NCBI RefSeq assembly: GCF_001194135.2
Contig: NC_068993.1
Span: forward strand, 53,245,564-53,309,563
DNA from: Octopus bimaculoides
Lineage: Eukaryota
Length of the DNA: 64,000 nucleotides
Direction: 5' to 3'
Below, piece after piece: positions 32 to 62,672 of this stretch. Positions within the stretch are counted from its first letter, which is position 1. The number at the start of each line of letters is the position of its first letter. The position numbers and the translations under genes are program-made. The notes beneath the pieces are model-generated. The model was not told where the DNA came from and did no database searches. It was given only the letters and a program-made list of their open reading frames with translations.

Positions 32-79
32 CATACATACATACATATACATATACATATACATACATCATCATTCTAG

Positions 80-256
80 GGAAGTTTCAAAATCCCATGG
101 AATTGGTCCATTGATTCATCTGCTGGAAGACAGCAGTGAAAATGCTGTGTCCAATGCTGCTGCTGTTCTCACTAACCTTGCTCTTCATGAATCACTTCGA
201 CAGGATGTCAAGCAAAAAGGTGTTGTTAGTGCCCTTGTGAAGGCTCTTAAATTTGT
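80..256 (+). CDS. ARMC3: ARMC3 exon (ARM repeat) [58 protein letters not shown]
   Basis: ctag|g acceptor, gt|gtaagt donor, open frame, ARM consensus. Confidence 0.88.
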
Positions 257-641: not shown

Positions 642-679
<38 letters not shown>

Positions 680-755
680 TTTTAAAAAGGATTGACGTAA
701 CTTCGCAAAGGTAAACAGTCAAGACGAAGAGCGCGATTTGATTGTAAGATATTTT

Positions 756-793
<38 letters not shown>

Positions 794-25183: not shown

Positions 25184-25192
25184 ATGATAAAA
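25184..25192 (+). CDS. Candidate first coding exon (ATG ATA AAA, MIK)
   Basis: gcgATGATAAAA|gtaagt; the phase-0 donor fits the next exon and supplies a start codon and basic n-region for the signal peptide. Only 9 coding nt, so uncertain. Confidence 0.5.
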
Positions 25193-32789: not shown

Positions 32790-35700
32790 CACACACACAA
32801 ACACACATACATGCACATGTATATTTTTGTTTCAGTGTGTCCAGGAAGTACAACTATTTGCAACAGAGAAGTAACATGTCCTGAAAGACGTGTCTATAAA
32901 GAATGTAAAGTGTCTCGTCTGAACAATGATAAATTGGTATGCAATGACAGTCTAGAATGGGAACCAAAGTTTGCATGTCCAGGTAAAAGAGATCTCAACA
33001 CATAATTATAATTGTTGTTGTTATTAATCTTTGCAATTTATTCTTGTTATTCTTTTTTGTCATTTTATAATATTGGAAATATTACAAAAGGGGAAAACAT
33101 ATAGGGAAGTGATCTGCCTGTTACATTGTACATTGCCATAGGTAGTCTTGAAGTCCATTGTATTCCAGTCTCGGCCAGTGGTTCTCAACCAGAGACCGTA
33201 TTGTCTTTGGGGGTCCATATCAGATTGTGTAGTAATAAAATCAATTATAATTGTTCAGTAGACAAAATATTTTGATAATTTTTTTTTATACAATTCCTAA
33301 TAATATTTAATTATAAAAAATATAAGATTTTTTTAAACACTGAATGGCTGATTGTCCAAAATAGGAATTAAAGGGGTCCTTAGACAAACAAACAAAAAGA
33401 ACACAACTCCAATAATGCACAGAGTCAATGACTATTGAAAAGGTTGCATGACGCAATGAAAATTTTAGTAAAAATAAATTAGTAAATCAAACCAGTGAGT
33501 GTGTTATATCAGACACTAAAAGAGAATGACTCTCTTCGGATACAATAAGATATTCATATAAATGTATGTATGTATATAAGTATGTATGAATGAATGCATG
33601 CTTGTCTATGAAAGTGTGTGCATATATTTCCTAAATGATGTTGACTATTTAAACTAAATGAATCTTTTCCACCCCTCCAGAGTGTACCAAAACTACTATC
33701 TACTGCAATAGAAGTGTAAACTGTAGTGAAACATTCATTGGCAGTGAGTGTATTTTACCATTTAACACCTCACAGAAATTGATATGTGGTGATGATCAAC
33801 AATGGAAAAGTGACTTTAAATGTCCTCCAGGTAATAATTTTATTGTATAGAATTGGTTTTTTTTTATTTATTTGATTGTTTTAATGGAATATGTCTCTAT
33901 TGAAAAAATTGATAATTAAGTGAAAATTAAATCTAATTTTTAATTTTTTTATTTTTCCTGGCGCCAACACTTCTTTTTATCAATTTTCCTTTTTCTTTCT
34001 TTTCTATCTGCCTTGTCTATTTTATGTGATATATGGATTATATATGTATATAATACAAGTATATATATAGCCTATGTAGGGTGTTTGAGCTAAATTTAGC
34101 CATTATTTTGTCTCTTATTTTCTGGAACTGCTCGATGTATTGTTAAACATTCAGTGTCATCGGAGAGCATGTAGGTTAATGTTGTTGCGAATAATTTAGC
34201 TGACATGGAGAACTGGGAGTCATCTCTATATTGGTATAGAGTTACTTGTATCATGATGACTTGCAAAGCAAGGATTAGAATCGAAGGGCCCTAGAGTCAA
34301 CTTAGCTAAAACCAAAGTCTTAATAAGTAGGAAGGTAGACAAATCACAAATCCCTTCAGGTAGATGGCCCTGCTTGATCTGTAGAAAAGGTGTAGTTAGA
34401 AACTCCATAACGTGTACCAAGGGTAAGCTATGCACACATAAGAGGTGCAGCAATATCAAAGGAAGGCTAACTGGGAAGATAGTTTTAGTATGTGGCAAAT
34501 GCTCAGGTGCTATAAACACTGAAAATGTGCAGAGAACAGCTTCTGTCACATTCCAGGGAGAAAAACTACAAGTAGTTGATAGCTTCCATTACCTAGGGGA
34601 CCAAGTCAGTAATGGGAGTGGGTGCTCTGAAAGTGTAGCTGCTAGAATAAGAATAGCCTGGGCAAAGTTCAGAGAGCTCTTACCTCTGCTGGTGACAAAG
34701 GGCCTCTCGCTCAGAGTAAAAGGTAGACTGTATGATGCATATGTATGAACAGCCATGCTACATGGCAGTGAAACATGGGTTGTGACTGCTGAGGACATAC
34801 GTAAGCTTGCAAGGAATGAAGCCAGTATGCTCTGCCAGATGTATAATGTCAGTGTGCATACACGACAGAGTGTAAGTGCCCTGAGAGAAAAGTTGGATTT
34901 AAGAAGCATCAGATGCAGTGTGCAAGAGAGACAGCTGTGCTGGTATGGTCATGTGTTGTGAATGAATGAGGACAGCTGTGTGAAAAAGTGTCACACCTTA
35001 GCAGTTGAGGGATCCTGTGGAAGAGGTAGACCCAGGAAGACCTGGGATGAGGTGGTGAAGCGCAACCTTCGAACATTAGGCCTCACCGAGGCAATGACTT
35101 GTGACCGAGACCTTTGGAAATATGCTGTGCGTGAGAAGAGCCGGCAAGTCAAGTGAGACCATAATCCAAGGCCTCTGCCAGGGGTGTAGCCAGCCCACTT
35201 ACGTGTAACATCCCTTCATTGGACACTAAACTCCACTTGCGAAGACCTGTTGAGGCAAGTGAAACCGAAATCGAACTAAATTTGATGACTGGCATCCATG
35301 CCAACGTCTCCTTCATTAGACACTAAACTCGGCTTGTGAAGACCTGTTGGGGCAAGTGAAAGCGAAATCATGATGGCACCTGTATCAGTGGAGCGCTAAG
35401 AGCACCGTCCAAGCGTGATCGTTGCCAGAGCAGCAGTCTGGCTTCCATGTCAGTGGCATGTAAATAGCACCATTTGAGCGTGATCATTACCAGCGTCGCC
35501 TTCCTGAAACTTGTGCCGGTGGCACATGAAAAGACATTAGAGCGAGGTCATTGCCAGTGCCACCGGACTGGCTCCTGTGCAGGAGGCACATAAAATACAC
35601 CATTTTGAGCATGGCCATTGCAAGTACCGCCTGACTGGCCTTCATGCTGGTGACACGTAAAAGCATCCACTACACTCTTGGAATGAATGGGGTAAGAAAG

Positions 35701-38522
35701 GGTATCCAGCTGTAGAAACTCTGCCAGATCAGATTGGAGCCTGGTGTAGCCATCTGGTTCGCCAGTCCTCAGTCAAATCATCCAACCCATGCTAGCATGG
35801 AAAGCAAATGTTAAACGATGATGATGTATGTATGTATGTATGCATGCATGCATGCACGTATATAAATATGTGTGCATGTATGTATTTCCTAAATGATGTT
35901 AACTATTTAAACTAAATGAATCTTTTCCACCCCTCCAGAGTGTACCAAAACTACTATCTACTGCAATAGAAGTATAAACTGTAGTGAAGCATTCATTGGC
36001 AGTGAGTGTATTTTACCATTTAACACCTCACAGAAATTGATATGTGGTGATGATCAACAATGGAAAAGTGACTTTAAATGTCCAGGTAATAATTTTATTG
36101 TGTAGAATTGTTTTTTATTTATTTGATTGTCTTAATGGAATATATCATTTTTGAAATAATTGATAATTAAGTGAAAATTGACCTGATCAAATCTGGAATT
36201 ATTTTGAATTTTTCCTGGTGCCAACACATCTTTTCATCAATTCTCTTTTTTCTTTCTTTTCTATCTGCCCTGTCTGTTTTATTTTTTTTGGAGCCTCTTT
36301 CTATATTTCTGCTGTGGTATATGGATTATATATATATATATATATAATACAAGTATATATAACCTATGTAGGGTATTTGGGCTAATTTAGCCATTATTTT
36401 GTCTCTTATTTTCTGGAACTGCTTGATGTATTGTTGAACAATCAATGTCATTGGAGAGCGTGTAGGTTAATGTCGTAGTTGCGAATAATTTAGCTGACAT
36501 GGAGAACTGGGAGTCATCTCTATATTGGTATAGAGTTACTTGTATCATGATGACTTGCATTTAGTATCAAAATGCTAACATGCTTTGAGAACACTCAATA
36601 CTTTGTGAACACTCAATGCTTTGTGAACACTAAAGAAGCTGTAAAATGTGACATGAATAGCTGCAACCAAGACTAGTCTGCTGTTTGCTAGCAGAAAAGT
36701 GACACAGCAAGCATTCTGAGTGTATTCAAACACCAAAATTCATCCAACAGCTCAAGGAAGAACAAGGTGCTAGAAGATGCAAGCAAGAGAATCTGGGCTT
36801 TGGCAAGAGATTTGGGTGTTGGGGTCACTACTATGAAGCTGGCCCTAAGTGAGGACCTTTTTTACTACTGGAAAAATACAACAAGACACAAAATCTGACA
36901 GTCTATGCTAAGCAGAACTGTTTGGCAAAGAACATAGAAGCTGATGGACAGGCTGAGCCACCCTGTTCATCCAGGGATAATCTAGTTCTTTTCAAATGAC
37001 CTGTGGCAGGACCAGTTGCACAACATCTGCGACAATGGGTGGTTTGCCTACAATCAAAAAACTAAAATTTTAACTTTATCCATGGATGGTATATGGTTTT
37101 ACTTGAATTTTTTTCATATCACTTTTGCTATTGCTGTGAGTTTAGTGTGTATCTTACTTAATTTTAATGAATAAGATGTTTTGAAATTTCTTAATGGTTT
37201 TTAATAGTTTTCAAACCTTTTAACATTTTATTCGATGCCTGACCCTAAAGGATTCATGTTATTCCATTGTTGTTGTACTATTATCATTGTTATTTTATAG
37301 GTGACTTAAATAAATCTAATCCTTGTTCCATTATTATTTTGTACTTAGCTCATGTTAGTTAACACAAGTTCCTGATAATTTAAGATAGTGTGATCTAATT
37401 AAATTAGTACATAATAATCATGTTCTCTATTAATAGTTTAGTTCACCATTATATTCTATGTTAATTCCAATCATTCATTTTATCAGTTTCTTACACCTTG
37501 ATGAGTCTATCATTATAAACCATGTAAATTCTATGTATCAATTCTGTACATTAGTTATAAAATAAATTTTATCTCTTATGTGTCCTTTAAATGATATTAG
37601 ATAAGTTTAATTTTTAAAAAAAATTTAGTCCAATATATATAAAACATTTTTAATTTCACATCTTATCTATGGTTCCTTATATTGGTGTAAATAAGTCTAA
37701 ATGTACTTTACCATAGCATTTTAAATTAATACCACTTCATGGTTTTTGCATACTGCATTGATTGACTAGTTACATTACTATACACTATTTCTTTTTATTT
37801 TTATTTCATTATTGATTTATAATTAGCTTTTGTTTATTCACATATTAATTAAGCAAATATTTGTATCTTAAGTTTTTCAAACTTAGCATATGTAAAACAA
37901 TACTGATACATTATTCTGATTAATGAAAACTATGAATAAACATTTACTGTATCTGTACACAATATAGCAACTTTATTTTATATACTTTTGACCTAGGTGC
38001 CTTATGGTAAAACTTCCCCTGCTCCATTATAAACTGGTCTGCTAGTAGAGAACCCCCCCCCACCTATAGTAGTTTGTCACTAAACCCAAAGAAATTTTAT
38101 AACCATATCATCCATGTATATTGTTTACCCCTTTCCCTTTCCCCATAAAGAAAATGCTAGTGCCCTCTTAAGCTTTGAATCACTAGGTCTGATAAGATGA
38201 TCCATAAATCAAAAAAAATAAATAAATAAATAAAAATAAAATCAGTGACAGTAAAAAATCTACTTAGAATTAATTACTAGCCTGTATGGTCTGGCTAAGT
38301 CAAAATGTTTTTTTTGTATTCTTCCTTTCTACTTGGAGAGTTTAAATGTAGTTACAAAAATATGTCCTGTTGAAATGAAATTTCAGTAAATTTCTATATC
38401 TTTGTGCAGCTGAGGATTGCTCTGCATTTTACATTTAATGTAATGTTCACATTGCTTAAATAAATGGAGTCGCATGAAAACGATCGTACTGCATTAACTT
38501 TGGATATCCTTGTTGCTTATTT

Positions 38523-38603: not shown

Positions 38604-41600
38604 TATGTATAGGCATATGTATGTATGCTTATTTTATACATATATTTATTGATATAAACACATTCATATAAATGTACGTATGTATGCATGCATTTATAAA
38701 TGTATATATGCATGTATATGAATATGTGTGCATGTATGTATTTCCTAAATGATGTTGACTATTTAAACTAAATGAATCTTTTCCACCCCTCCAGAGTGTA
38801 CCAAAACTACTATCTACTGCAATAGAAGTGTAAACTGTAGTGAAACATTCATTGGCAGTGAGTGTATTTTACCATTTAACACCTCACAGAAATTGATATG
38901 TGGTGATGATCAACAATGGAAAAGTGACTTTAAATGTCCAGGTAATAATTTTATTGTGTAGAATTGTTTTTTATTGATTTGATTGTCTTAATAGAATGTC
39001 TTTATTGAAATAATTGATAAATAAGTGAAAATTGATGTAATCAAATCTGAGGTTTTTGAAAAAATTTGCCTGGTGCCAACACATCTTTTTATCAATTCTC
39101 TTTTTCATTTCTCATCAATCTGTCTTGTCAATTTTTTTTGGTGCTTCTTTCTCTATGTGTATTTTGGTATATTGTTTATATATTTATAAAGAAAATGTTG
39201 ATAAAGGACCACCACTTTAGTGAAAGTGTTCATTGAGATGTCCTGTAAGTGAGCTTTTAAGAAGTGTGCGTAATGAAAATATCAGAAGGCATTTTTATAT
39301 AAAATATTTTAATTTATTAAAAGATAATGAGTGCTGACAAGTAATATGAGTGTAGCCGGCGTATGTGCATGAATCAGAAAAAGGTTTATAACTTACATTG
39401 GAAAAATGGATTCAGTTGGAAGTTGTTTTAAGCAAACAAAAATGGTGCTAGTGTAAACAAACATATACTGATCATAATATAGACAGAGTTGTGGGCTGAT
39501 GTTATTCAGGATTTGGCATGAATGAAATAGGCTGTTCATAATGTGGGTTGAGTTGAGGGCTGATATAATTCAGAGCTAGCAGTGCAAAGTTGGTGACAAG
39601 AACAAAGGGGCTGTTCCTATGCTTAGCAGCCAATGTTGCTGGTTTGTTGTCTTTTTGCTAACTGGTCCAAACACCCACTTAACTCTTCTCGGTCAGAGAA
39701 CTACCTTTGGCATTAATATGTGCTCAGCTCTGATTGGCTGGAGTTGCTATTGCAGAACTATGCAACAATGTGATAACAAAAATAGCTTTTCTGACTTGCA
39801 ACAGTACCCTTCACTGACACTACAGATTGATACAAGCAACAGTAATGCAGCAAAATAAAAAAATAAAAACAGTGTGAAATGTTCAAACAAGGTAAATGCA
39901 TCAGGAAAAGAAATATTACAAATACAATAAAAGGCAAATATACAAAAATGAGAAGACGACAGTCATTTAGTGCAAGTTCATATATATATAGTCTTGCAAA
40001 GTCTCATGGGCCTATGGACGTGACAGCCTCTACAAGTTGTCATTCCATGTATTGGTGGAGGTGGGGAAGATGTGTGTGGAGTGGTGTGTGTAGAGGGTGT
40101 ATGAGGTTTCTAGGTATGAGCATCTGTATAGGCTCTTTTAAGTCTATCAACAGAGAAAGTGTCTCTGGAACCACTGCAGTCAATGGTGAAATGTTTGTTA
40201 GAATGAGAAAGAACACGATAAGGTCCTGAGTAAGGTTGGATGAGAGGACTTCTCATGGTGTTGTTTCTGATGAAAACGTGGGTCCATGAGGCCATGTCCC
40301 TCAGGACTGCAGGTTTCACAGTTTGATGCTTGGTGCTCATTGGCAGCAGGTCTTCAAGGTATGTATGGAGGCGGTTCACATAAAAAGGATCTTGAGTCAA
40401 TAGATCTACTGGGGCAAGCATCTGCCTTGGTAAAGACAATGGAATGCTGAACAGCAGCTTGGCTGGGGTGTATCCAAGTCCTTCTTTGAACAAAGTTCGA
40501 ATGCCAAGGATTACTATTGGGAAGTACTCGATCCAGCTATGATTATCAGGATAAGCACAAAAATGTATATATACATTTGTAAGTATGTGTGTATTTGAAT
40601 GGGTGTGTGTGTATATATGTATTTTCTGATTGAAGGTAGCTATTTATTGTAAATTAATTTTCTTCTACCCCTCCAGAGTGTCCCAACATTACTTCTGTCT
40701 GCAATAGAAGAGTAAACTGTAGTGAAACATTCATTGGCACTGAGTGTATTTTACCATTTAACACCTCACAGAAATTGATATGTGGTGATGATCAACAATG
40801 GAAAAGTGACTTTAAATGTCTTCCAGGTAATAATTTTATTGTATAGAATTGTTTTTTTTTTATTTATTTGATTGTTTTAATGGAATATGTCTCTATTGAA
40901 ATAATTGATAATTAAGTGAAAATTGGTGTAATCAAATCCAAAGATATTTTTGAATTTTGCTTCATGCCAACACATCCTTATATCAATTCTTTTTATCCTT
41001 TCTCTTCAGTCTGCCTTGTCAGTTTTTTTGGTGCCTCTTTCTCTATGTGTTTTTTGGTATATAGATTATATATGTATACTAGCAGAGATATCCAGCATAG
41101 CACAAGATTAAAATGGTATAGTTTGTATACATATATTACAGTTATGTTGAAACAGGTGATACAGGAAAGTGCAGCATTGATGACAAAATATTTGTGGAGT
41201 AAATGATGGTCTAACTTAGTGACATGTTATACATCAAGCCCTAACCTATCATGGACAATTGGGAGTTGTAGGGAGGCATGTAATTTTTGAACCTACTACA
41301 GAGCTGTCAGTGGATATACATGCCGTGGAGGTGGTCAGTACTGCGTGTCATCGTATAATTGACAGTCAAATGAATGGGAGTGTAATGGAGATATTGTATG
41401 TAAATGGGTACATTCTGGAAATGGGCTGCAATAGAAGATAACAACAGGGATGTGAACTGTTGAAATGATGCAGAAGGTGAAGTGTTGACATTGGATTGCT
41501 GGTGTGGTTGTAGAATAAGAAACATAAAGTGAGCCTATGCAGTCATATGAGAATATGTAGCAATGAATTACTTGAACAAATAAGGCTTAATGGCTTCCCG

Positions 41601-42014
41601 CATAGTATGTATATAGTATGTGTGTATTTTTGTATGCAGTGTAAATTGACGAAATATAAGAAAATGAACAAAATAGAAGCACATGTATGAAAATGCTAAT
41701 TTAACGGTAAATACCACAATAATTATTACAGAGAAACAAAGAATTATATATATATATAGGATAAATTTCATAATGTAAGTGTAAATATGCAATTGTAAAT
41801 ATCTTGCAAACTTGCAACTGCTGTGCTAATTATTAACTGATAATAGAACAGTAAATGTGTATTTTAATATATACCTTGTATATTTTATATGTATATTTTA
41901 ATATATACCTTGGACCTTGCTACCTCAGTGGTTTTTTTTCAAGAGTCTCACTTCTAGCACTCACATACATACATTCAGGCATGTCAGTCATCACATATGT
42001 ATATGTATGTGTAG

Positions 42015-42054
<40 letters not shown>

Positions 42055-45000
42055 AATAATGCACTTAACGTGGAAACACACAGGCTCACAGCTACTCACA
42101 CTCGTACACTCACAGACAGATACATACTCATATACAAAATGTGACATTGTGTTATAAAATGTTCCTGATATACACTCAAATACATATACTAAGTTAGTCA
42201 CACAGGGACATACATTCATGCATGTCAGTTGTTACATATGCATATGTATGTGTACATGTGTGTATGTTTAATAATGTACCTGACATGGAAAGACGTCATA
42301 TACAAAATGTGATTATTTGCATTATTTACATTGGATGGCTATGTGTCCTAGAAGTAGCTGATAGCTTCCGCTACCTAGGTGACCGAGTTTGTAGTGGGGG
42401 AGGGTGTGCTGAAAGTGTAGCTTCTAGAATAAGAATAGCCTGGGCAAAGTTTAGAGAGTTGGACGATTTGACTGAGGACTGGTGAAACCGGATGGCAACA
42501 CCAGCCTCCAATCTGATTTGGCAGAGTTTCTACAGCTGGATGCCCTTCCTAACACCAACCACTCAGAGAGTGTAGTGGGTGCTTTTATGTGTCACTCGCA
42601 TGAAGGCCAGTCAGGCGGTACTGGCAACGGCCACGCTCAAAATGGTGTATTTTATGTGCCACCCACACAGGAGCCAGTCCAGGGGCACTGGCAACGATCT
42701 CGCTTGAAAATCCTATGAAGGCCAGTCAGGCGGTACTGGCAACNNNNNNNNNNNNNNNNNNNNNNNNNNNNNNNNNNNNNNNNNNNNNNNNNNNNNNNNN
42801 NNNNNNNNNNNNNNNNNNNNNNNNNNNNNNNNNNNNNNNNNNNNNNNNNNNNNNNNNNNNNNNNNNNNNNNNNNNNNNNNNNNNNNNNNNNNNNNNNNNN
42901 NNNNNNNNNNNNNNNNNNNNNNNNNNNNNNNNNNNNNNNNNNNNNNNNNNNNNNNNNNNNNNNNNNNNNNNNNNNNNNNNNNNNNNNNNNNNNNNNNNNN
43001 NNNNNNNNNNNNNNNNNNNNNNNNNNNNNNNNNNNNNNNNNNNNNNNNNNNNNNNNNNNNNNNNNNNNNNNNNNNNNNNNNNNNNNNNNNNNNNNNNNNN
43101 NNNNNNNNNNNNNNNNNNNNNNNNNNNNNNNNNNNNNNNNNNNNNNNNNNNNNNNNNNNNNNNNNNNNNNNNNNNNNNNNNNNNNNNNNNNNNNNNNNNN
43201 NNNNNNNNNNNNNNNNNNNNNNNNNNNNNNNNNNNNNNNNNNNNNNNNNNNNNNNNNNNNNNNNNNNNNNNNNNNNNNNNNNNNNNNNNNNNNNNNNNNN
43301 NNNNNNNNNNNNNNNNNNNNNNNNNNNNNNNNNNNNNNNNNNNNNNNNNNNNNNNNNNNNNNNNNNNNNNNNNNNNNNNNNNNNNNNNNNNNNNNNNNNN
43401 NNNNNNNNNNNNNNNNNNNNNNNNNNNNNNNNNNNNNNNNNNNNNNNNNNNNNNNNNNNNNNNNNNNNNNNNNNNNNNNNNNNNNNNNNNNNNNNNNNNN
43501 NNNNNNNNNNNACATATTGCTATTTTATAACTGCCAGCAATTTCTTCATCACAAATTGCCGTCCTAGCTCCTGCGAAAAGGGATTACTCTGCTATGTATA
43601 ATCAGGGCAGCGCAAAAAGTTGTTTTGCACAAGCATTTCTATAGCCAATTAGATGGAGGAAATTTACGTACGCTTAATAATGTTACGCAAAACAGCCTTC
43701 AGACTTTCCCTATTAATTTCATTGTCTTTTGAATTATGAACATATTTACATCATAAGGGTTTTTTTGTTGTAAGGCTTTCTTTTTTAGTTGATTTTCACC
43801 TAGCAAGACTTATCATAGATGGCGTAATAAGTCACAGCCAGACAAGGTCGGGTTATACAGCTAGTATATATATATATATATATGAGGTTGGGATGATAAG
43901 TTCATAGGCTGACTATGAAGGAGTGATGCTAGTTCTGTGAAATCTTGCTTGCATTAATTTCAACAACTGGTATTAATATTTTGTATTTAAATGTAGTATT
44001 CATGCACAGTTTTCAGAACATTAACTTATTGCTTCATTTTAGTTTCAGATCCTGGAAGTCTTGCAATTTTGGGGTATATCTTCCCTCCTATTATTATTAT
44101 TATTATTATTATTATTGCAGGTTTGTCAATTTTTTTTTCTAATAATAACCATAAAAATCTTATAAATCCAGTGTCAGACCTTAGAATTTTCTTAACCTCT
44201 CATCACTCAGCTTCATTTATTTCCATAGTTTTTACATCTGTAATTCCAAACTCAAGGTTTACTGAAACATTGAACTGACGTCCAATTTGAATTTTACCTT
44301 TTTTTTTTGTCATCTATAATCACATTGTACTGATTTTTAGCNNNNNNNNNNTTACCCACCATCACACACATAGACCATTTACTGCAGCAGATTCAAAGCA
44401 ACAATATTTCACAAATAAATCTTAACCTTATTAATCCTTTATTTTCATTGTTTTTTTTTACATTCATTGCCCCGTTTTGGTTACCCCATTATCCCCTCAT
44501 TTTTCTTCAATGCTTCCTGGATCTTACCACTGCACCCAGTGGGGTGGTACCACCCACTTTGGGAACCACTGGTTTAATTTTTTGCACACTTGAGATATTC
44601 TTCCTACTATTAACCATCCAGTCATGGAAGATGTGTGGAATTGTTTTGGAAGCCAGACAAATCATGACCAACAGTTTGGTCTGTTTAAGATACAACACAA
44701 TGGCTCTAGCAGTTATGTCTGAACTCATAATCATGTAGCTGGTATTCCAGTAGTTTCACTCACATGACCATTATATTTCTATAAGTTGATATCTAATCAC
44801 TATTGACTTTTATTTATTTTTCAATGATTATCATGAAGCATAGGTACGGAATTTATATATATATATATTTCTTAAACAAAAATATTATTGATAATGACTT
44901 TGAATTTTCAGCTAGCTAAGCCTTTCTCAGTCTGCAATGCCTTGAAGTTCATTTTGGCTTCATATAGTTCATTGTGGCTACAATAGAATTGAACTCAAAA

Positions 45001-46125
45001 TGTAGAAGTTTTAAACTGTATACTGTAAAGCCTTTTGGTTAGGGACATGGTTGCTTTTGTACAACATAAACTTAAGATACCAATCTCATGATGAGAGATG
45101 TGAAGTTCAGGTGGCAAAATGTTGTGCTAGATACACTAAATCTTCTAGTCTGACACCCACTTTCTCTTCCATGACTATTGAAATATACCCTTACTACACA
45201 CACACATGTGTGCACAATTACATACATATATATCTACCTACCTACCTGCCTGCCTGCCTTTATATATCTGTAAAATGTTTTGTTTTGTCTTTTGTAGTTG
45301 TAATTTATCCATGCCGTGACAGGATAGAAAACGCATTATCAGGTCAGTATTACTATTTTCTTTATTATGATATTAATTAATCAAGTTCTTAAATCTCATT
45401 TATCATCGTTTTCTTGTATTTTGGGGGGGAAATTGAAACATGAAATTTTAAAGAACGAGACCCAGGAAGACATGGGATGAGGTGGTGAAGCATGACCTTC
45501 GAATGTTGGGTCTCACAAGGGCAATGACGAAAGACCGAGACCTCTGGAGATATGCTGTGACTGGCAAATAGAGTGAGATCACAGCTGTAGCCTACGCCAG
45601 TGTCACATAACCAGTCCACTCAAAAGTACCTTGGATTGTAGGGCAACATGCCGTGCTTGAAGGGACCTGCTGAGTCAAGTACATCATCAACATCAAAATC
45701 AAATCAAACCACAATAAGATGGAAATTGTAGTTGTGGCTGATACCAACGCTGTCTGTCTGGCTCCCCAAGCTGGTGATACATAAAAAGCACCATCCAAAT
45801 GTGGTTGTTGCCAGCTCCCTCTGGCTCCTGTGCCAGTGGCATGTAAAAGCACCATCTAATCGTGGTCGATGCTAACCTCCTCTGGCTCCCGTGCTGGTGG
45901 CAGGTAAAAGCACCATCCAAATGTGGTCGATGCCAGCCCTCTCTGGCCCTTGTGCCAGTGGCATGTAAAAAGCACCCACTGCACTCTCGGAGTGGTTGGC
46001 GTTATAAAGGTCATCCAGCTGTAGAAACACTGTCAGATCACATTGGAACCTGGTGCAGCCTCCTGGCGTCCCAGACCCCAGTTGAACGAGCATGGAGAAC
46101 AGACGTTAAACGACGACGACGACGA

Positions 46126-46157
<32 letters not shown>

Positions 46158-46378
46158 ATGGTCAGCAAAAAATGATATATAGAATAAGATATATTATTGT
46201 TAACCTAACATACATAGGCACAGATGCTAACTGCATGCATAGCTCTATGACTAAGAAGTTTTACATACAGTTGAAAAGCACAGCACTTTGGGGGAAAGTT
46301 TTCTTTTATTAGAGCTTCCAGACAATGAAAGTCTTGTGAGTGAATTTGGTGTATGGAAAGAACATACATACACACACG

Positions 46379-46447
<69 letters not shown>

Positions 46448-49400
46448 NNNNNNNNNNNNNNNNNNNNNNNNNNNNNNNNNNNNNNNNNNNNNNNNNNNNN
46501 NNNNNNNNNNNNNNNNNNNNNNNNNNNNNNNNNNNNNNNNNNNNNNNNNNNNNNNNNNNNNNNNNNNNNNNNNNNNNNNNNNNNNNNNNNNNNNNNNNNN
46601 NNNNNNNNNNNNNNNNNNNNNNNNNNNNTGACACAAATGAAATTTAAATGTTGAAGCGAAACTAATGGTTTGTGAGTGTTCTTGAATGGCTTACAAATAC
46701 AGGGGTTGGACAAAATAATGGAAACACCTTAAAATTTCAAACAAATTTATTTCAATAAGGGGTAGGACCACCTTTGGCAGTAATTACAGCTTGAATTCTA
46801 TGAGGTATTGACTCGTACAAAGTTTGAATTGTTTCCAAAGGAATTTTTGTCCATTCTTCAGCTAAAACAGTCTCCAGTTCTTGTAGTGATGATGGTGGAG
46901 GACATTGACTCCTTACTTGTTTTTCTAAAATGCACCATAAATGTTCAATAATATTGAGATCTGGGGACTGTGGTGGCCATATAAGATGTTCAACTTCACT
47001 AGAATGTTCCTCATGCCATTCAGTAACAACTTTAAGCTGTGTGAATTGGCTCATTATTATCTAGAAAGATTGTGTTTACCTCTGGGAACAGTTCTGCAAC
47101 CATAGGATGAATTTGATTAGATAAAATGCTTAAATAGTCTTGACTACTATTTCTGTGGATCTTGCCCTGACCGCAGCATCCAGAACATGAGAAGAATCAA
47201 AGGAATCACTAACTGTGACATCCCAGACAAGGCATCTGCCTTTCAATCAGGGACACAAGGAGAGGCCGTTGGGTCTTTTCCCATCATATCTGAAGTACCA
47301 CAATCTGTTGGCCAACTACATTTTCCATTCTGTGGTGTTTGAGACGTTTGGTGGGGTCAGACCAGTGACTTCCAGATTCCTGTCTTCACTGGCTGCTCGC
47401 CTAGCAGAGGTAACTGGCAAAGCTTGTGAGGGTGCTTGGTTGTCCCAGTGCATCAGCCTTGCCATCACCTGCAGCAATGCTGCAAGCATGCTGGTGTACC
47501 TCAAAAGCCATCAGGGAGGTTTCCCAATGCCCTCAAATTTTCTACTTGTTCGAGTAATATGATACTATAACAGTTTATTATTGAGTTAGCAAAGCTATTG
47601 TTCACAAAGGAGCGAGAAAAACACAAATAGCAAAGAAAATATAAAATAATTTGCACAAAACACACACACATATATATGTACAGACACACACATACACGCA
47701 TACATATATGATAGCCTTTTTTGGTTTACATCTGCCAAATCCACTCACAAATCTTTCATCGGCCCATGGCTGAACTAGAAGACACTTGCTCATGGTGGCA
47801 CACAGTGGGATTGAACCCAAAACTAAGTGGTTGGTAAATATATAGTAAAATAACACCCACATTGTATTCTATATTATACTATATATTTCATTGTTTATTG
47901 TATTATTGTTTTATATCTTTTCTAAGGTTCAGTATTTTGCTTTGTATCTCGAAGAAACAAAGGACAAGCTCCTAGAGATAATGGACAAGGTGAGAGTGGA
48001 TGTTTAATTGGATTTATGTGATTTTTGTTCTCTTAACTGTTATATTTTATTTTTTTAATAACAGTTTCAGCCTCTACTTCAGTAGATTTATGATCAAAGA
48101 TATTCCTGCCAAGCTTACCTTGTCTTTTATTCACATACTATATATCTGAGGCAACATATACTATGTGTTTTGCCACTTTCTGAAGAAAATATGGCATAAT
48201 CAGAAGCAGATTTGGCTGCTACTTCTTGCAGGTGGAGAAACACTATAGAGGCTAATATATTGTCCTGCATATAGTATGTTTGTGTATGCACACTAAGTGT
48301 ATGACAGTGTTGTATGAGCTTGCTCTATATTTTGGGCTTAGCTGCTCGAAATCATTCTCACATGGCCTCACTGAGTAGATGACAATGAACCAAAATGTCT
48401 AATGATATGAGGTTCTTGAGAAGACTAGCTCACCTCAGTGAAACTGAGTTTTGATAAACCCATAATATCATTATCTACTCATAGATTATATAGCTGGTGT
48501 ACTGCCTTAACCTTACTTATTATTATAAATCGTGGATAGATAAGTATATATGTATATTTATGTATTTATAATCACTGACTCTCAATAGGGTAGTATATCA
48601 ATTTAGTAAATTTTTGTTGTCTTTAGCATTCTCTTTATTTATTTATCCCTCACACATTGTCAACTCTACAATAGTATTCATGCATAAATGTCCTTATTTC
48701 ATAGTATTCATGCATACACCCAAAGAAAATTGATAGACAAAGTTTTGCAATAGAAGTTCTTGTCCCCCATAAATTGAGTTCTAGAGAGAAAATCCAAATT
48801 TCATAGTCAAAGTGTGTAAAAAATAGGTGTGAGAACAAATGGGGATAAGAAGATATTTTATATGGTGAAATTATCTGTTATTAGGTTTAATCAAAAAGTG
48901 TATGACTTGAAGTCTAGACAATAAGTCTGATGAGTATAAAAGGAAGAAACCTCTAAAAAGGCCAAGGTATCTTAATATCTGATTTATAAGAGTGAGCACA
49001 GTTAGAAATTCTTTTGTAGTGATGCACAAAAATGTCAGTTTGCAGGGCAGATAAGTTCATCATCAAAATATAACGCCCCATCCTAAATCTGCTTCATTCT
49101 TTGCATTCATTGCCCTTGCATCAAAACCATAGTGATATCCATTTGGCAGCTGATGGTGGGAATATACTTATGTTTTGCTTGATTTTGAATTTCTTATATC
49201 TTAGTTTCATCATTTTACGTTGTCCTTCATTCTTGTAAAGTGGAAAGTGTTTGTGGATTCAAAGTTAGATTGGTATTGGTTGGTTTTCCTTCATAGGTAA
49301 TTTTTTAGGCTTAGATAACGTCTTCATTGAACACTAGACTCGGCTTGCGAAGACCTGTTGTGGCAAGCGAAAGTGAAATCGTGATGGCACCAGTACCAGT

Positions 49401-50473
49401 ACCAGTAAATCATTAAGAGCACCGTCCGAGCGTGACCGTTACCAACGTCGCCTTCCTGGCACTTGAAAAGACATTCGAGCGAGTTCGTTGCCAGTACTGC
49501 TGGACTGGCTCCTGTGCAAGTGGCACGTAAAATACACAATTTCAAGCGTGGCCGTTGCCAGTACCGCCTGCCTGGCCTTCGTGCGGGTGACACGTAAAAG
49601 CACCCACTACACTCTCGGAGTGGTTGGCATTAGGAAGGGCATCCAGCTGTAGAAACTCTGCCAAATCAGATTGGAGCCTGGAGTAGCTATCTGGTTCACC
49701 AGTCCTCAGTCAAATTGTCCAACCCATGCTAGCATGGAAAGCAGATGTTAAACGATGATGATGATGATAATGATGATGATGATATGTGTAGAGGGACTGA
49801 ACCAGAAGCTATGTGGTTGGTAGTAAAATCATGTCCACATTCTATCTTACATTTTACTGTATATATACTTGTTTATTTTATTACTTTTGTATATTTTTTC
49901 TTAGATACTCAGGAAAGAGAACTTCTAACATCTAAAAATCAGGACACACAACCAAATGAAAATATTGAAGGTGAGAGAGAAAATGATAGAAATGATAGCA
50001 AAAATCCTGAACATGGGGACTGCATTTATTTTCATTTTTTAATCTCAATGTGTGCCTGTACTTCTTTCTATCTTGTCTTATAATGGGACTGTATATGTTT
50101 CATTGTCATATGCTATGTGTTCTGTAAATTTCTGAAGAGAATAGAGTATGATTAGAAGTAGGTTTGACTGCTACTTCAAGTAGGTGGAGAAATTCTAGAG
50201 AGGTTCATATATTACCTTGTTTATAACGTGTGTGTGTTTGTGTGTATTTCTAAATAAGGTAATATTTTTGAAGGTGTGCAAAATGGAGAACAAGGCACAT
50301 ATCAACACAATATAAATCAAGAAGGTATGTATTCTTCAAATTTAGGAAGAAAATAATATATGATTGGAGGTAGACTTGGCTTCTATTTTTCACAAGTAGA
50401 GAAATCCTAAAAAGATTAATGTATAGACTTGCTTATGAGTGTGTGTGTGTGTGTGTATGTTTGTGTGTGTGTT

Positions 50474-50504: not shown

Positions 50505-53500
50505 GTATTTTTGTGTGCATGTGCATGTGTGTGTGTGCATGTATATATGTGTGTATGTGTGTGTGAGTATAACTGATTTTCTTTTTGAGATGACTACACA
50601 CTACATGTCTTACTTTGAAGCAATGGAAGTGAGTGAGAATGTTATAACTTAGTGTACATGAATGACAGAGTTGACAGTCAATCTCTGCCAAGCAGCTTCA
50701 CTCTACATACTTTAGCTCTGCTACGATAACAACAGTCCTGATACTCTTTCATCAGAAATCGTATATACGTATATGATAAGCATTGTTCAGTTTCCATCTT
50801 CCAAACGCACTGGCTATGCTTACCCTAGAAGACCCTTCTTACGCTGGCACTCAGAGGGACTGAATCAGAAGCTATGTGGCTGGTAGTAAAATCATGTCCA
50901 CATACTATCTTACATTTTACTGTATATATACTTGTTTATTTTATTATTTTTGTATATTTTTTCTTAGGACCTGAAGAAGAAACATGTCCAATGCTTGAAG
51001 ATGTGGAAAATAGAGAACAAAGCACAGAGCAAAAAAATATAAATCAAGAAGGTATGTATTCTTCAAATTCAGGAAGAAAATAATATATGATTAGAGGTAG
51101 ACTTGGTTTCTATTTTTCACAAGTAGAGAAATCCTAAAAAGATTAATGTATAGACTTGTTTATGAGTGTGTGTGTGTATTTGTGTGTGTATGTAGGTGTT
51201 AGAATATTTATAAATAATGTAATAATCTCCCTGTAATNNNNNNNNNNNNNNNNNNNNNNNNNNNNNNNNNNNNNNNNNNNNNNNNNNNNNNNNNNNNNNN
51301 NNNNNNNNNNNNNNNNNNNNNNNNNNNNNNNNNNNNNNNNNNNNNNNNNNNNNNNNNNNNNNNNNNNNNNNNNNNNNNNNNNNNNNNNNNNNNNNNNNNN
51401 NNNNNNNNNNNNNNNNNNNNNNNNNNNNNNNNNNNNNNNNNNNNNNNNNNNNNNNNNNNNNNNNNNNNNNNNNNNNNNNNNNNNNNNNNNNNNNNNNNNN
51501 NNNNNNNNNNNNNNNNNNNNNNNNNNNNNNNNNNNNNNNNNNNNNNNNNNNNNNNNNNNNNNNNNNNNNNNNNNNNNNNNNNNNNNNNNNNNNNNNNNNN
51601 NNNNNNNNNNNNNNNNNNNNNNNNNNNNNNNNNNNNNNNNNNNNNNNNNNNNNNNNNNNNNNNNNNNNNNNNNNNNNNNNNNNNNNNNNNNNNNNNNNNN
51701 NNNNNNNNNNNNNNNNNNNNNNNNNNNNNNNNNNNNNNNNNNATATATATATATCCATATATACATATATATATATACATATACACACTCATGCATATAT
51801 ATGCAGGTATGTATGTATATATATGCATATATGTATGTATATGTATAAAAATATACATATGATGAGTGTTGTTATAGCATGAGTTCCTCTGTAAGTTGGA
51901 ACATCACGGGGACTGATTGGGTATCTATGTAATAATAGAATATATCATAGTATAATATGCATATTGTATCTTAGATTTTAGTACATATGTTGCTGTTCAG
52001 TTCCTTATTTTTGTATATTTCTTGCTATATATTTTGGACTTAGCTGCTCGAAATCATTCTCTCAGGGCCTCACTGAGTAGATGACAATGAACCAAGATGT
52101 CTAATGATATGAGGTTCTTGAGAAGACTAGCTCACCTCAGTGAAACTGAGTTTTGATAAACCCATAATATCATTATCTACTCATAGATGATGATTGGTGT
52201 CTAACTCTGAGAGGGTCTGTGGATTACAAAAGTGATCATGTGAACCAGCCCAACTTGCTGTGTATTTATTTGGGAGTTTTCAGAATCAATCAGCAGATTA
52301 CTTTTCACAGAATTCTGAGGAATCATGTTGAATATGTGTTATAAAAGAAGCCATACATAGCTCATGAAAATTAATCAATAATTGTTAGAATGGTTTCAAC
52401 ATTATACAAAATTGATTATACTGAATAATGGTGAAACTATTGTAAATGACATATTAAAATGATTTCCTTACTCGATTCATCAATATTTGTCATTATATAT
52501 AATATGTGTGTTTGTGTATGTATCTTTTCTATTGCTTATTTCAGTCATTTGACTGTAGCCATGCTGGAGCACCCCAACCGCACCCCCTTGAAGAGATTTA
52601 GTCGAATGAATAAACCCTAATATATTTTTTTAAAGCCTGGTACTTATTCTTTCTTTCTTTGTTGCCAAACTGCAAAGTTATGGAGATGTACTCACCAACA
52701 CCAGTTGTCAAGTGGTGGTGATGGTGGGGACAAACACAAACACACATACACACACATAGGCTTGACAACTAATGTTCGTGTGCTTATGTCCCTGTAACTT
52801 AGTGGTTCGGCAAAAGAAACCAATAGAATAAGTACTAGGCTTACAAAGAATAAGTCTTGGAGTGGGGAGGGACGATTTGTTTGACTAAAGGTGGTGCTCC
52901 AGCATGGCTACAGACAAATGACTGAAACAAGTAAAAGAATATATATATATGTGTGATTTTATTAACTCTGATGAGAGAAATATAGAGTATTGCTATGGTT
53001 GGAGTTAGCTCGCCTATAGCAACTATATCTTTTCGAAACAGCCGTTAGACTTTATACATAAACTTTATACATGTTCCTGACTCTTTATGAATCATTTTAC
53101 ATCTGCTTTATCTTCCTCCTCATTCCGACTTCGCAAGTACATTTAAGGACTTACACTTTTTATCTATTTATATTGATGAATTTTTATGTGTTTTATAAAT
53201 TTTTATATGTGTATAAATTTTCGTGTATATGTATGTATTTATAGATTCTTAGAAATTTTTATGTCATATAGATGAATGCAACTATGTATGTAATTTGTAT
53301 ACCATGGAGAAATTCGTTAATATGGAATGAATGAATATATACATCGGCCTTTGAATTTGTCTTCTCCTCTCCTTAATTCATCATCATCATCATCATCATC
53401 ATCGTTTAACGTCCGCTTTCCANNNNNNNNNNNNNNNNNNNNNNNNNNNNNNNNNNNNNNNNNNNNNNNNNNNNNNNNNNNNNNNNNNNNNNNNNNNNNN

Positions 53501-58819: not shown

Positions 58820-59187
58820 ATTCTCTCTCATAAAGAGGTTCGTCTTCTTGGCTGTAGTTTCTGGCTCTGAATTTCTGGAACCACTGTTGACACTGGCTTA
58901 CGCTTATTGTCTGATGCCCATATACTGCATTAATATTCCTCACACTTTCCATTGTGTTGTTGCCTTTATTGAACTCATAAAGCAAACTATGCCGAATATG
59001 CTCCTTTGTCACTTCCATTATAGCTTTGAAAAAATAACTGTTAAAATCGAACTGCACTCTTCAAAACTTGCACTAAGAATAAATACTTGGTTAGATTACT
59101 ACCTGCTTTTAAAGCAAGTTGACGCAGGTAGTTTATCTTTTAGTTCATGCAGTTGATAAAACCGCATTATTTATGGGATGATCCAAT
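58820..59187 (-). mobile_element. Mariner family B 5' fragment with TIR
   Basis: MEVTKEHIRHSLLYEFNKG...QWFQKFRARNYSQEDEP (mariner HTH); TIR ends accgcattatttatgggatgatccaata. Confidence 0.88.
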
Positions 59188-61959: not shown

Positions 61960-62672
61960 TATCAGGCAGAGTAAAAAATAAGCAATGTTTTGAAACATGA
62001 AATTCATCATGATATATTTCAACAATGCAGAAATTTTATTCATCAAAGTAAGTACCATTATAATCTACACATTTTTACCAACGAGTTACAAGTTTGTTTA
62101 TTCCAGTAACAAAAATCTGCAGTTCTGGAGCTGATAAACTCTTTGAACGCACTTTCAGCATCAGTTTGATTTTTTAACTCCTCTCGCAGGAAATCATCAA
62201 GGTGCTTGAAAAAGTGGTAGTCGGTAGGAGAAAGGTCTGGGGGAATAAGCTGGGTGGGGAAGAACTTCGTAGCCAAGTTCCCTCAACTTCTGGGGTGTCA
62301 TTTGTGAAACATGTGGTCAAGCATTGTCATGAAGAATGATTGGCCCTCTTTGGTTGACCAGTGTGGGACGGAGGAGCAGCAGTTTTTCATTCATTTTGAC
62401 ACTGTCATGCCAATTTATTTCTGCAGTAATGGTTTTTCCAGGTTTTAAGAAGTTATAGTGGATGAGTCCAGCAGTTCACCACCAAACAATCACCATAACC
62501 TTCTTTTTGAAGAGCTCAGGTTTAGGGAAAGTTTTCGGTGCTTCACCTTGGTCCAACAAGTGTGAAGAACGTTTTTTTATTATTATACAGAAGCCAACTT
62601 TCATTGCAAGTTACAATATGGTCAAGAAATGGATTGGTCTGGTTACGGAAAAGAAGTGATGAGTAAATTTCA
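61960..62672 (-). mobile_element. Mariner family A 3' half
   Basis: Reverse complement of 21300-21977, including the TIR; PPDLSPTDYHFFKHLDDFL. Confidence 0.88.

What the first reader, a model, noticed from the sequence alone, without database searches (positions are those of the whole stretch)
44090..44116. Transmembrane helix written by an (ATT)9 microsatellite
Seen: the core of the predicted TM ([27 protein letters not shown]) is nine consecutive ATT codons inside a 72-nt phase-1 exon, completed by the next exon that adds the basic stop-transfer RRNK. (ATT)n is one of the commonest non-coding microsatellites in this window. Inference: an exapted or slippage-expanded repeat in which in-frame slippage would tune membrane-span length, a possible source of allelic variation in localisation or dimerisation.
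Basis: partly seen in the sequence, partly recalled or inferred. Interest (0 to 1): 0.7.

Follow-up and report, generated by a model that had tools for sequence, protein, structure and literature searches.

The report
Poly-isoleucine membrane helix from ATT repeat
Nine ATT codons really do lie inside a conserved coding exon that forms the membrane-spanning helix of an octopus cysteine-rich receptor-like protein; a relative has four, so the run probably grew by slippage, but the gene model is already public and nobody has checked that the exon is expressed.

Summary
The (ATT)9 run at 44090-44116 is real. It sits in a stop-free 72-nt phase 1-1 exon (44049-44120) with good splice sites. Sequence alone was weak evidence, because hydrophobic, phase-compatible pseudo-exons occur about every 6 kb here. 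Homology makes the case.

- **Published model.** Window exons reproduce residues 4-394 of Octopus bimaculoides UniProt A0A0L8H5C1 (394 aa) exactly. That model contains ...[24 protein letters not shown]....
- **Paralogue.** An annotated O. vulgaris protein (CAI9732128.1) uses the homologous exon. It has the same acceptor and donor and 90-93% identical intron flanks, but only (ATT)4.
- **Origin.** The exon is therefore older than the long run, which is a slippage expansion and not an exapted intronic repeat.
- **Missed exon.** It ends the helix and supplies the first basic residues.
- **Third paralogue.** Its helix core is a TTA (Leu) repeat, with a 9-nt in-frame indel between two sister species.

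Caveats:
- There is no transcript evidence.
- The exon lies on an 830-bp island between assembly gaps.
- The O. sinensis orthologue lacks both the helix exon and the mini-exon.

Verdict: a real, modestly interesting new example of a known kind.

The parts
25184..25192 (+). First coding exon, ATG ATA AAA|gtaagt (MIK)
   Evidence: This is the only MIK-encoding site followed by a gt donor; it supplies the first three residues of P0014.
29723..29787 (+). Signal-peptide exon ([22 protein letters not shown])
   Evidence: tblastn with the O. sinensis orthologue P0001. It is part of the exact reconstruction of P0014.
30862..31010 (+). Cysteine-rich N-terminal exon ([19 protein letters not shown]...)
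   Evidence: dN/dS against O. sinensis is 0.65.
32836..32982 (+). Type-1 six-cysteine repeat exon, phase 1-1
33681..33830 (+). Type-2 six-cysteine repeat exon, copy 1
35939..36085 (+). Type-2 six-cysteine repeat exon, copy 2
38795..38941 (+). Type-2 six-cysteine repeat exon, copy 3 (intact, but not used in published model P0014)
   Evidence: It is absent from P0014.
40677..40826 (+). Type-2 six-cysteine repeat exon, copy 4 ([12 protein letters not shown]...), the last extracellular exon
   Evidence: Orthologous to O. sinensis L002 12410-12563.
44049..44120 (+). Transmembrane exon, 72 nt, phase 1-1: (D)[23 protein letters not shown](G). An alternative in-frame acceptor at 44043 adds VS and is the one used by the published model.
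   Evidence: Homologous to the O. vulgaris exon L003 64075-64149, with identical splice sites.
44090..44116 (+). (ATT)9 microsatellite, encoding Ile x9 in the helix core
   Evidence: The paralogue has (ATT)4 at the same position.
45298..45342 (+). 45-nt mini-exon, phase 1-1: [15 protein letters not shown].
   Evidence: Paralogous to the 36-nt mini-exons L003 66834-66869 (GVVYCLRRRRSS) and L004 31347-31382 (GVVYWILKRRKS).
47927..47989 (+). Cytoplasmic exon [21 protein letters not shown], phase 1-1
   Evidence: The O. sinensis counterpart is in L002 16690-16850 (acceptor near 16740; the part used by the P0005 model is 16779-16823). It has a 21-nt in-frame insertion.
49905..49970 (+). Tail exon [22 protein letters not shown]
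50274..50324 (+). Candidate tail exon [16 protein letters not shown]. It is a tandem duplicate of the next exon and is not in the published model.
50968..51083 (+). Last coding exon of the published model ([28 protein letters not shown], then read-through [10 protein letters not shown] and stop). A gtatgt donor at 51053 could instead continue the gene.
42744..43511 (.). Assembly gap (768 N) on the left of the island that carries the transmembrane exon
44342..44351 (.). Assembly gap (10 N) on the right of the 830-bp island 43512-44341

Best explanation
The window is Octopus bimaculoides. The finding lies in a gene for a type I single-pass membrane protein. The protein has a signal peptide, a cysteine-rich N-terminal module, one type-1 and up to four type-2 six-cysteine repeats (each on its own phase 1-1 exon), one transmembrane helix, and a hydrophilic tail built from tandemly duplicated exons.

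The helix is encoded by exon 44049-44120 plus the mini-exon 45298-45342. Together they read [26 protein letters not shown], followed by RDR. The nine Ile residues in its core are nine pure ATT codons.

The exon is older than the long repeat. The homologous exon of a paralogue has the same splice sites and an (ATT)4 run just before the same GCA G|gt end. The long run is therefore a replication-slippage expansion of a short, pre-existing Ile-codon run. It arose in an AT-rich genome where ATT/TTA repeats are the commonest local microsatellites.

Because the unit is 3 nt, each slip adds or removes one Ile without breaking the frame. Because any hydrophobic residue serves in a simple membrane anchor, such changes are tolerated.

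What is shown: exon homology, conserved splice sites and frame, and the repeat-number difference. What is inferred: that the exon is spliced into mRNA in this species, and that the run functions only as generic hydrophobic filler.
For: - Repeat and exon: the (ATT)9 run and the exon anatomy are as described.
- Published model: window exons, including 44043-44120, reproduce residues 4-394 of UniProt A0A0L8H5C1 (P0014) exactly.
- Family search: a phmmer search of 1.84 billion representatives found 9 family members, all cephalopod where a source is named. P0002, P0003 and P0006 carry a helix plus a basic cluster after the Cys repeats.
- Homologous exon: the helix exon of O. vulgaris P0002 (L003 64075-64149) aligns with the window exon. 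Both have acceptor tttcag|AT and donor GCAG|gtttgt. Flanking introns are 93% and 90.5% identical. The net length difference in the exon is 3 nt, whereas the flanks carry indels of 1, 7 and 2 nt. The O. vulgaris exon has (ATT)4.
- Mini-exon: it is conserved in phase and splice sites in three loci.
- Third paralogue: its helix core is TTA ATA (TTA)4 ATA in O. sinensis. It differs from O. vulgaris by a 9-nt in-frame indel inside 360 nt that are otherwise about 99% identical.
- Selection on the ectodomain: ectodomain exons give dN/dS about 0.53, with all cysteines kept, against O. sinensis.
- Hydropathy and model: the Kyte-Doolittle maximum is 3.0 over residues 281-301. AlphaFold2 predicts a helix at 288-311.
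Against: - No transcript evidence: no RNA evidence could be consulted.
- No RefSeq model: no NCBI RefSeq protein of O. bimaculoides contains these exons. The only O. bimaculoides protein that does is the UniRef entry P0014.
- Assembly context: the exon sits on an 830-bp island between N gaps.
- Missing in the orthologue: in the gap-free O. sinensis orthologous intron (L002 14348-15446) neither the helix exon nor the mini-exon has a counterpart. The O. sinensis models P0001 and P0005 have no helix, and the donor of its last Cys exon is deleted.
- Odd helix residues: a Pro-Pro pair directly precedes the Ile run, which is unusual inside a helix.
- Unexpectedly high flank identity: the flanks are 90-93% identical to the O. 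vulgaris paralogue. That is more than the 78-83% seen between the two paralogues within O. bimaculoides. It needs either selection on the flanks or gene conversion to explain it.
Confidence: 0.7

Rival explanations
1. Relic exon in a gene that is losing its anchor. The exon was a real transmembrane exon, but this gene now mainly makes secreted products by read-through after a Cys-repeat exon, or is decaying. The ATT run would then expand neutrally, as in any intron.
For: - The O. sinensis RefSeq model P0001 ends in ...KCPGNNFIV*, by read-through of the repeat-exon donor.
- The same read-through sequence follows all four type-2 exons here.
- O. sinensis lacks the helix exon and the mini-exon, and has lost a donor.
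- No RefSeq protein of O. bimaculoides covers this gene.
- The run is perfectly pure, and a Pro-Pro pair sits next to it.
Against: - In the window, the frame, both splice sites and the total exon length are intact.
- The downstream mini-exon and tail exons are all open and in phase.
- Ectodomain dN/dS is about 0.5, with every cysteine kept.
Confidence: 0.2
2. Scaffolding error. The island 43512-44341 belongs to another paralogue and was dropped into a gap of this gene. The published model would then be chimeric.
For: - There are N gaps on both sides of the island.
- The piece 42349-46629 has no counterpart in the O. sinensis orthologous intron.
- The O. bimaculoides copy of the paralogue (L004) has a 655-N gap exactly where its own helix exon should be.
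- The island's flanks are 90-93% identical to the O. vulgaris paralogue.
Against: - The neighbouring contig 44352-46447 carries a mini-exon (45 nt, VVIYPCRDR...) that clearly differs from the one already assembled in L004 (36 nt, GVVYWILKRRKS). O. bimaculoides therefore has two separate loci.
- The island has an empty TTAA site where L004 has a MITE. It also differs from L004 upstream of a shared 16-mer.
- The order and orientation (helix exon, then the 44654-44853 segment, then the mini-exon) match the paralogue's layout.
Confidence: 0.07
3. An ordinary intronic microsatellite that looks like an exon by chance.
For: - Phase-compatible hydrophobic pseudo-exons are frequent here: four loci in 23 kb, one of them written by (TG)n.
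- tblastn with the helix peptide hits many non-coding ATT runs in related loci.
Against: - The exon is homologous, splice site for splice site, to one used in an annotated O. vulgaris protein.
- The frame is kept through indels while the flanks carry non-3n indels.
- It is included in the published O. bimaculoides model.
Confidence: 0.03

Closest known systems
UniProt A0A0L8H5C1 (Octopus bimaculoides, 'TNFR-Cys domain-containing protein', 394 aa; P0014)
   Same: It is the same gene. Window exons reproduce residues 4-394 exactly, including [26 protein letters not shown].
   Different: - It is an unreviewed automatic prediction.
- It uses acceptor 44043.
- It omits type-2 copy 3 (38795-38941) and the candidate exon 50274-50324.
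- It ends by read-through at 51083.
- No paper in the searched library mentions it.
Octopus vulgaris CAI9732128.1 / A0AA36FEY1 (P0002), a paralogue
   Same: - It shares the architecture of Cys repeats, helix exon and tail of repeated exons.
- Its homologous helix exon has identical splice sites and ends ...ATT ATT ATT ATT GCA G.
   Different: - Its run is (ATT)4, not (ATT)9.
- The rest of its helix is mixed (L, V, G, A).
- Its exon is 75 nt rather than 72 nt.
- The model skips the conserved mini-exon at L003 66834-66869.
Leucine repeats encoded by CTG repeats in signal peptides, such as the CNDP1 (CTG)4-7 'Mannheim' polymorphism
   Same: A trinucleotide repeat encodes a hydrophobic homopolymer in a membrane-targeting segment. 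Repeat number changes hydrophobic length in frame. For CNDP1 this changes ER targeting and secretion (PMC13116943). Leucine repeats are common at the N-termini of membrane receptors (PMC1557989).
   Different: - Here the residue is Ile (ATT), not Leu.
- The segment is a stop-transfer membrane anchor, not a cleaved signal peptide.
- No polymorphism or functional effect has been shown.
Third paralogue (O. vulgaris CAI9732129/30, O. sinensis XP_036364319; P0003/P0010/P0011)
   Same: Its helix core is written by the same AT-rich repeat class. A 9-nt in-frame length difference lies inside it between sister species.
   Different: - The repeat is read in the TTA frame (Leu).
- The helix and the basic KSHKKK cluster lie on one exon.

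Membership tests
Coding trinucleotide microsatellite (homopolymeric amino-acid tract) | A perfect tandem trinucleotide run lying in frame inside an open coding exon | tested here: met
   (ATT)9 at 44090-44116, with 100% matches, inside the stop-free exon 44049-44120.
Coding trinucleotide microsatellite (homopolymeric amino-acid tract) | The host exon is a real exon, conserved in homologues with the same splice sites and frame | tested here: met
   The O. vulgaris exon L003 64075-64149 has the same acceptor and donor. The net exon indel is 3 nt, while the flanks have non-3n indels.
Coding trinucleotide microsatellite (homopolymeric amino-acid tract) | Repeat number differs between homologues by whole units | tested here: met
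   9 units here against 4 in the paralogue. There is also a 9-nt indel in the TTA-run helix core of the third paralogue between sister species.
Coding trinucleotide microsatellite (homopolymeric amino-acid tract) | The exon is transcribed and spliced into mRNA, and repeat length is polymorphic between individuals | not testable with these tools
   No RNA-seq or population data are available. No transcript-derived protein with this exon appeared in the protein searches.
Type I single-pass membrane protein | An N-terminal hydrophobic signal sequence | tested here: met
   [25 protein letters not shown]. It is conserved in O. sinensis P0001, and the AlphaFold2 model has a helix at 8-19. No dedicated signal-peptide predictor was run.
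Type I single-pass membrane protein | One hydrophobic span of about 20 residues or more after the ectodomain, followed by basic residues | tested here: met
   The 19-aa Kyte-Doolittle mean reaches 3.0 at residues 281-301, the only such stretch beyond the signal peptide. RDR and then RRNK follow. The model predicts a helix at 288-311.
TNF-receptor cysteine-rich domain (the name UniProt gives this protein) | Sequence match to the TNFR cysteine-rich domain profile | tested here: not met
   No Pfam TNFR_c6 hit at E<=10 for the repeats, or at E<=1 for five family members. No TNFR chain appeared in the PDB sequence search at E<=10. The UniProt name presumably rests on another profile (my inference), which was not tested.
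TNF-receptor cysteine-rich domain (the name UniProt gives this protein) | Structural similarity of the repeats to solved TNFR cysteine-rich domains | tested here: inconclusive
   The AlphaFold2 model has repeats at pLDDT 75-86 but pTM 0.33. Foldseek against the PDB gave no match at E<=0.001, and no TNFR among the top 50. The full-length multi-domain query is a poor probe.
Sushi/CCP domain (a resemblance recalled from the C...W...C ending) | Sequence match to the Sushi profile | tested here: not met
   There was no Pfam Sushi hit. Each repeat has six cysteines in about 49 residues, not four in about 60.

The most novel reading that the evidence does not exclude
In this cephalopod receptor-like family, AT-rich trinucleotide slippage repeatedly rewrites the membrane-helix core. 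It reads as Ile in the ATT frame in two paralogues and as Leu in the TTA frame in a third. This would produce heritable differences in helix length and composition between species, and perhaps between alleles. Those differences would alter sorting, surface level or signalling, making the repeat an evolutionary 'tuning knob' acting on a membrane anchor.
Probability: 0.15. Interest if true: 0.6.

Novelty: new member of a known kind. Interest (0 to 1): 0.4.

Why it matters
Hydrophobic homopolymer tracts encoded by trinucleotide repeats are known mainly as leucine runs in signal peptides. There, repeat number can change ER targeting, as in CNDP1. A pure nine-codon isoleucine run in the core of a stop-transfer helix is a rarer case.

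This example has a clear history. The homologous exon of a paralogue has four units. An Argonauta relative has a mixed I/V/L helix. A third paralogue shows a 9-nt in-frame indel in its repeat-written helix core between sister species.

If the repeat is polymorphic in O. bimaculoides, it would give a natural allelic series for testing how helix length affects trafficking. Practically, the case also shows two things about AT-rich, microsatellite-rich genomes. A hydrophobic open frame with splice-like edges is not evidence of an exon on its own. Assembly gaps and split models (one O. sinensis gene annotated as two proteins) can hide or remove a membrane anchor from an annotation.

Tried and rejected
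- **Word-indexed protein searches.** Searches with the repeat-plus-helix peptide and with the helix-plus-tail peptide found only the O. sinensis orthologue, or nothing. The window's own protein is hidden inside a 90% cluster. It surfaced only through the cluster look-up.
- **Orthologue search.** I looked for the exon in the O. sinensis orthologue. The contig holding the 5' half ends 6 kb after the last exon. The chromosome locus holding the 3' half has no counterpart of the helix exon or the mini-exon.
- **Mis-scaffolding from the paralogue.** I considered this seriously because the paralogue's locus has a gap at exactly the right place. I rejected it as the main reading because the mini-exon exists in two distinct versions in O. 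bimaculoides, and the island has an empty MITE site.
- **Terminal-exon reading.** In the window the ATT-frame ORF continues 52 codons past the donor. I rejected this reading because an 8-nt poly-T length difference breaks that frame in O. vulgaris.
- **Possible remnant in O. sinensis.** I checked whether an ATC/ATT run in the O. sinensis intron (L002 14447-14482) was a remnant of the exon. It lies in a stretch that also matches another place in the window (575-930, minus strand), so I read it as part of a repeated element, not an exon remnant.
- **Rfam.** A scan of 27-52 kb found nothing.
- **Ectodomain fold.** Pfam, the PDB sequence search and Foldseek gave no assignment. The only Pfam score near threshold (CIMIP3) comes from short repeated matches and is not credible.
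- **Exact-product look-ups.** Look-ups for P0003 and P0014 found no record.
Full report
**1. The observation**

The window is AT-rich (about 24-44% G+C per 2 kb) and full of microsatellites, transposon fragments and N gaps. It is clearly an animal genome.

At 44090-44116 there are nine perfect ATT units. They lie in tttcag|ATCCTGGAAGTCTTGCAATTTTGGGGTATATCTTCCCTCCT(ATT)9GCAG|gtttgt. This is a 72-nt stop-free segment at 44049-44120. Its phase matches the upstream cysteine-rich exon that ends at 40826. ATT/AAT-class runs are indeed the commonest trinucleotide repeats nearby.

By sequence alone this was weak evidence. A scan for AG..GT-bounded, phase 1-1, stop-free segments with a hydrophobic 19-mer found four separate loci in the 23 kb downstream of 40826. 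One of them is a (TG)n repeat that reads CVCVCV.

**2. What gene this is**

Upstream on the + strand lie:
- a signal-peptide exon (29723-29787);
- a Cys-rich exon (30862-31010);
- one type-1 six-cysteine exon (32836-32982);
- four tandem copies of a type-2 six-cysteine exon (33681, 35939, 38795, 40677).

All the repeat exons are phase 1-1.

The first protein search found only O. sinensis XP_029655600 (P0001, 179 aa). This is a secreted-looking model that ends by read-through of a repeat-exon donor.

An exhaustive phmmer search with my spliced model found nine family members. All that carry a source name are from cephalopods: O. sinensis, O. vulgaris, O. bimaculoides and Argonauta hians.

A cluster look-up then showed that P0001 shares its 90% cluster with UniProt A0A0L8H5C1 (P0014), a 394-aa O. 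bimaculoides protein. Concatenating window exons reproduces residues 4-394 of P0014 exactly. An ATGATAAAA|gtaagt site at 25184 supplies residues 1-3, MIK.

The window is therefore O. bimaculoides. The published gene model already contains the poly-Ile exon: ...KCLP|[26 protein letters not shown]|[15 protein letters not shown]|[21 protein letters not shown]|....

**3. Independent support for the exon**

The O. vulgaris paralogue CAI9732128.1 (P0002) reads ...FTCP|DPESPILTIILGILVGVALLIIIIAG|QDPENG.... I fetched its locus (L003) and mapped that segment to 64075-64149.

The window's 43975-44341 aligns to L003 64000-64369:
- The acceptor (tttcag|AT) and donor (GCAG|gtttgt) are identical.
- The upstream flank is 93% identical and the downstream flank 90.5%.
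- The exon's net length difference is 3 nt (72 against 75), while the flanks carry indels of 1, 7 and 2 nt.
- The O. vulgaris exon ends CTT CTT ATT ATT ATT ATT GCA G, which is (ATT)4.

An Argonauta relative has a mixed helix, IIVLGVIVVVLIIFASLYC-KKWRKKRK. The exon and a short Ile run are therefore ancestral. The nine-unit run is a derived expansion. Total exon length stayed almost unchanged, because the extra ATT units occupy positions that are GTT GCT CTT CTT in the paralogue.

The alternative acceptor at 44043 used by P0014 is absent in O. vulgaris, which has taa instead of tag. So 44049 is the conserved acceptor.

**4.

P0014 places [15 protein letters not shown] between the helix exon and 47927. 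It maps to 45298-45342 (ttttgtag|TT...TCAG|gtcagt).

It is the counterpart of 36-nt mini-exons in the paralogue:
- GVVYCLRRRRSS at L003 66834-66869;
- GVVYWILKRRKS at L004 31347-31382, which the O. bimaculoides RefSeq model P0013 uses.

All are phase 1-1. The full helix is therefore [26 protein letters not shown], followed by RDR.

The 47927-47989 exon is also real. Its O. sinensis counterpart keeps the frame through a 21-nt insertion. It belongs to a series of tandemly duplicated tail exons at 47927, 49905, 50274 and 50968.

**5. Evidence bearing on 'tuning'**

The third paralogue has its helix and its basic cluster on one exon. The core of that helix is TTC TTA ATA TTA TTA TTA TTA ATA in O. 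sinensis. This is the same repeat class, read as Leu.

Against O. vulgaris, the surrounding 360 nt are about 99% identical outside the helix core. The only indel is 9 nt, in frame and inside the core, and most of the substitutions sit beside it. At the protein level this is FLILLLL---ICYC against [14 protein letters not shown].

In-frame length change in repeat-written helix cores therefore does happen in this family. Whether it matters functionally, or is polymorphic here, cannot be tested with these tools.

**6. Caveats**

- **Assembly context.** The helix exon sits on an 830-bp island (43512-44341) between a 768-N gap and a 10-N gap.
- **Missing in O. sinensis.** Synteny with O. sinensis runs 39000-42349 to L002 10137-14348, and resumes at 46629 to L002 15446. 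The intervening window piece, which holds the helix exon and the mini-exon, has no counterpart in the gap-free O. sinensis intron.
- **Split O. sinensis annotation.** O. sinensis has also lost the donor of its last Cys exon through an 89-nt deletion. Its gene is annotated as two proteins without a helix, P0001 and P0005 ('ribosome-binding protein 1-like'), split by an assembly gap.
- **Mis-scaffolding test.** I tested whether the island was misplaced from the paralogue, whose O. bimaculoides locus (L004) has a 655-N gap where its helix exon should be. Two results argue against it. The mini-exon exists in two clearly different versions in O. bimaculoides (window and L004). The island has an empty TTAA site and different upstream sequence where L004 has a MITE. 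Misplacement from the paralogue is therefore unlikely, though not excluded.
- **No RNA evidence.** None was available. No RefSeq protein of O. bimaculoides covers this gene.
- **Selection.** Ectodomain exons show dN/dS about 0.53 with every cysteine kept. This argues for a functional gene, but not specifically for use of the helix exon.

**7. Family assignment of the ectodomain**

UniProt calls the protein 'TNFR-Cys domain-containing'. I found no corroboration:
- no Pfam TNFR_c6 or Sushi hit;
- no relevant chain in the PDB sequence search;
- an AlphaFold2 model with β-hairpin repeats at pLDDT 75-86 gave no Foldseek match at E<=0.001.

I therefore leave it as a cephalopod-restricted six-cysteine repeat family.

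**8. Comparison with what is known, and verdict**

The closest described phenomenon is the leucine repeat encoded by CTG runs in signal peptides. Such repeats are frequent in membrane receptors (PMC1557989). In CNDP1 the repeat is polymorphic (4-7 units) and alters ER targeting and secretion (PMC13116943).

The present case differs in three ways. The residue is Ile, encoded by pure ATT. The segment is a stop-transfer anchor. Nothing functional has been shown. No paper in the searched library mentions these proteins.

The finding is real and the 'slippage-expanded' reading is supported. The 'exapted' reading is not supported. The exon chain needs the mini-exon added. The functional speculation remains open. 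I rate it a new member of a known kind, with interest 0.4.

Noticed in passing
window 29681-29716 and 29802-29849: The signal-peptide exon (29723-29787) is hemmed in by (ATT)7(TTG)5 just before its acceptor and by a (TTA)16 array 15 nt after its donor. The same repeat class therefore crowds another hydrophobic-coding exon of this gene.
   Followed up: partly
window 33681-33830, 35939-36085, 38795-38941, 40677-40826: The type-2 six-cysteine exon is present four times, spaced 2258, 2856 and 1882 nt apart. The published model uses three copies. The two O. sinensis loci fetched show three (one in L001, two in L002, either side of an assembly break), so copy number may differ between species or assemblies.
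   Followed up: partly
L001 and L002 (O. sinensis): XP_029655600 (on an unplaced contig) and XP_036364299, 'ribosome-binding protein 1-like' (on the chromosome, starting just after an N gap), look like the 5' and 3' halves of one gene. The second name appears to be an artefact of its low-complexity tail. An 89-nt deletion removed the donor of the last Cys exon, so the frame runs on as VVKIDPSKSK.
   Followed up: partly
window 47927-47989, 49905-49970, 50274-50324, 50968-51052: The cytoplasmic tail is built from tandemly duplicated phase 1-1 exons that share upstream or downstream intron sequence. The pair at 50274 and 50968 is 93% identical. O. sinensis and the O. vulgaris paralogue have their own independent arrays of tail-exon repeats.
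   Followed up: partly
window 41946-42140: A (TG)n microsatellite gives a phase-compatible, splice-flanked pseudo-exon that reads ...CVCVCVCV.... It is a useful negative control for claims that a repeat writes a helix.
   Followed up: yes
L004 30098-30146 and 22193-22420; L003 74910-75138 (also 76825 and 78736): A MITE of about 225 nt, with inverted ends CCCTTTAGTG...CTAAAGGG and TTAA on both sides (I take it to be piggyBac-like). One copy is inserted 60 nt upstream of where the paralogue's helix exon should be in O. bimaculoides. The contig breaks there.
   Followed up: partly
window 3-257 and 2436-2699 (+): Open frames that look like armadillo repeats to me (for example [51 protein letters not shown]). 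They suggest exons of an unrelated upstream gene.
   Followed up: no
window 34260-35153 (+), 58821-59060 (-), 62061-62475 (-): Long open frames that I take, by eye only, for a retroelement fragment (inside the intron between type-2 copies 1 and 2) and for mariner-type transposase fragments.
   Followed up: no
window 29204-29268: A short interstitial array of TTAGGG-like units (degenerate telomere-type repeat) about 450 nt upstream of the signal-peptide exon.
   Followed up: no
P0004, P0008 (O. bimaculoides UniProt entry; Logan contigs): Two family members end, after the type-1 repeat, in a conserved read-through tail: CPGKRNLNALSLFLLVLSLLFFLVILFLSLYNVGRIT. It looks like an alternative hydrophobic C-terminal anchor. 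In the window the equivalent read-through stops after KRDLNT.
   Followed up: no
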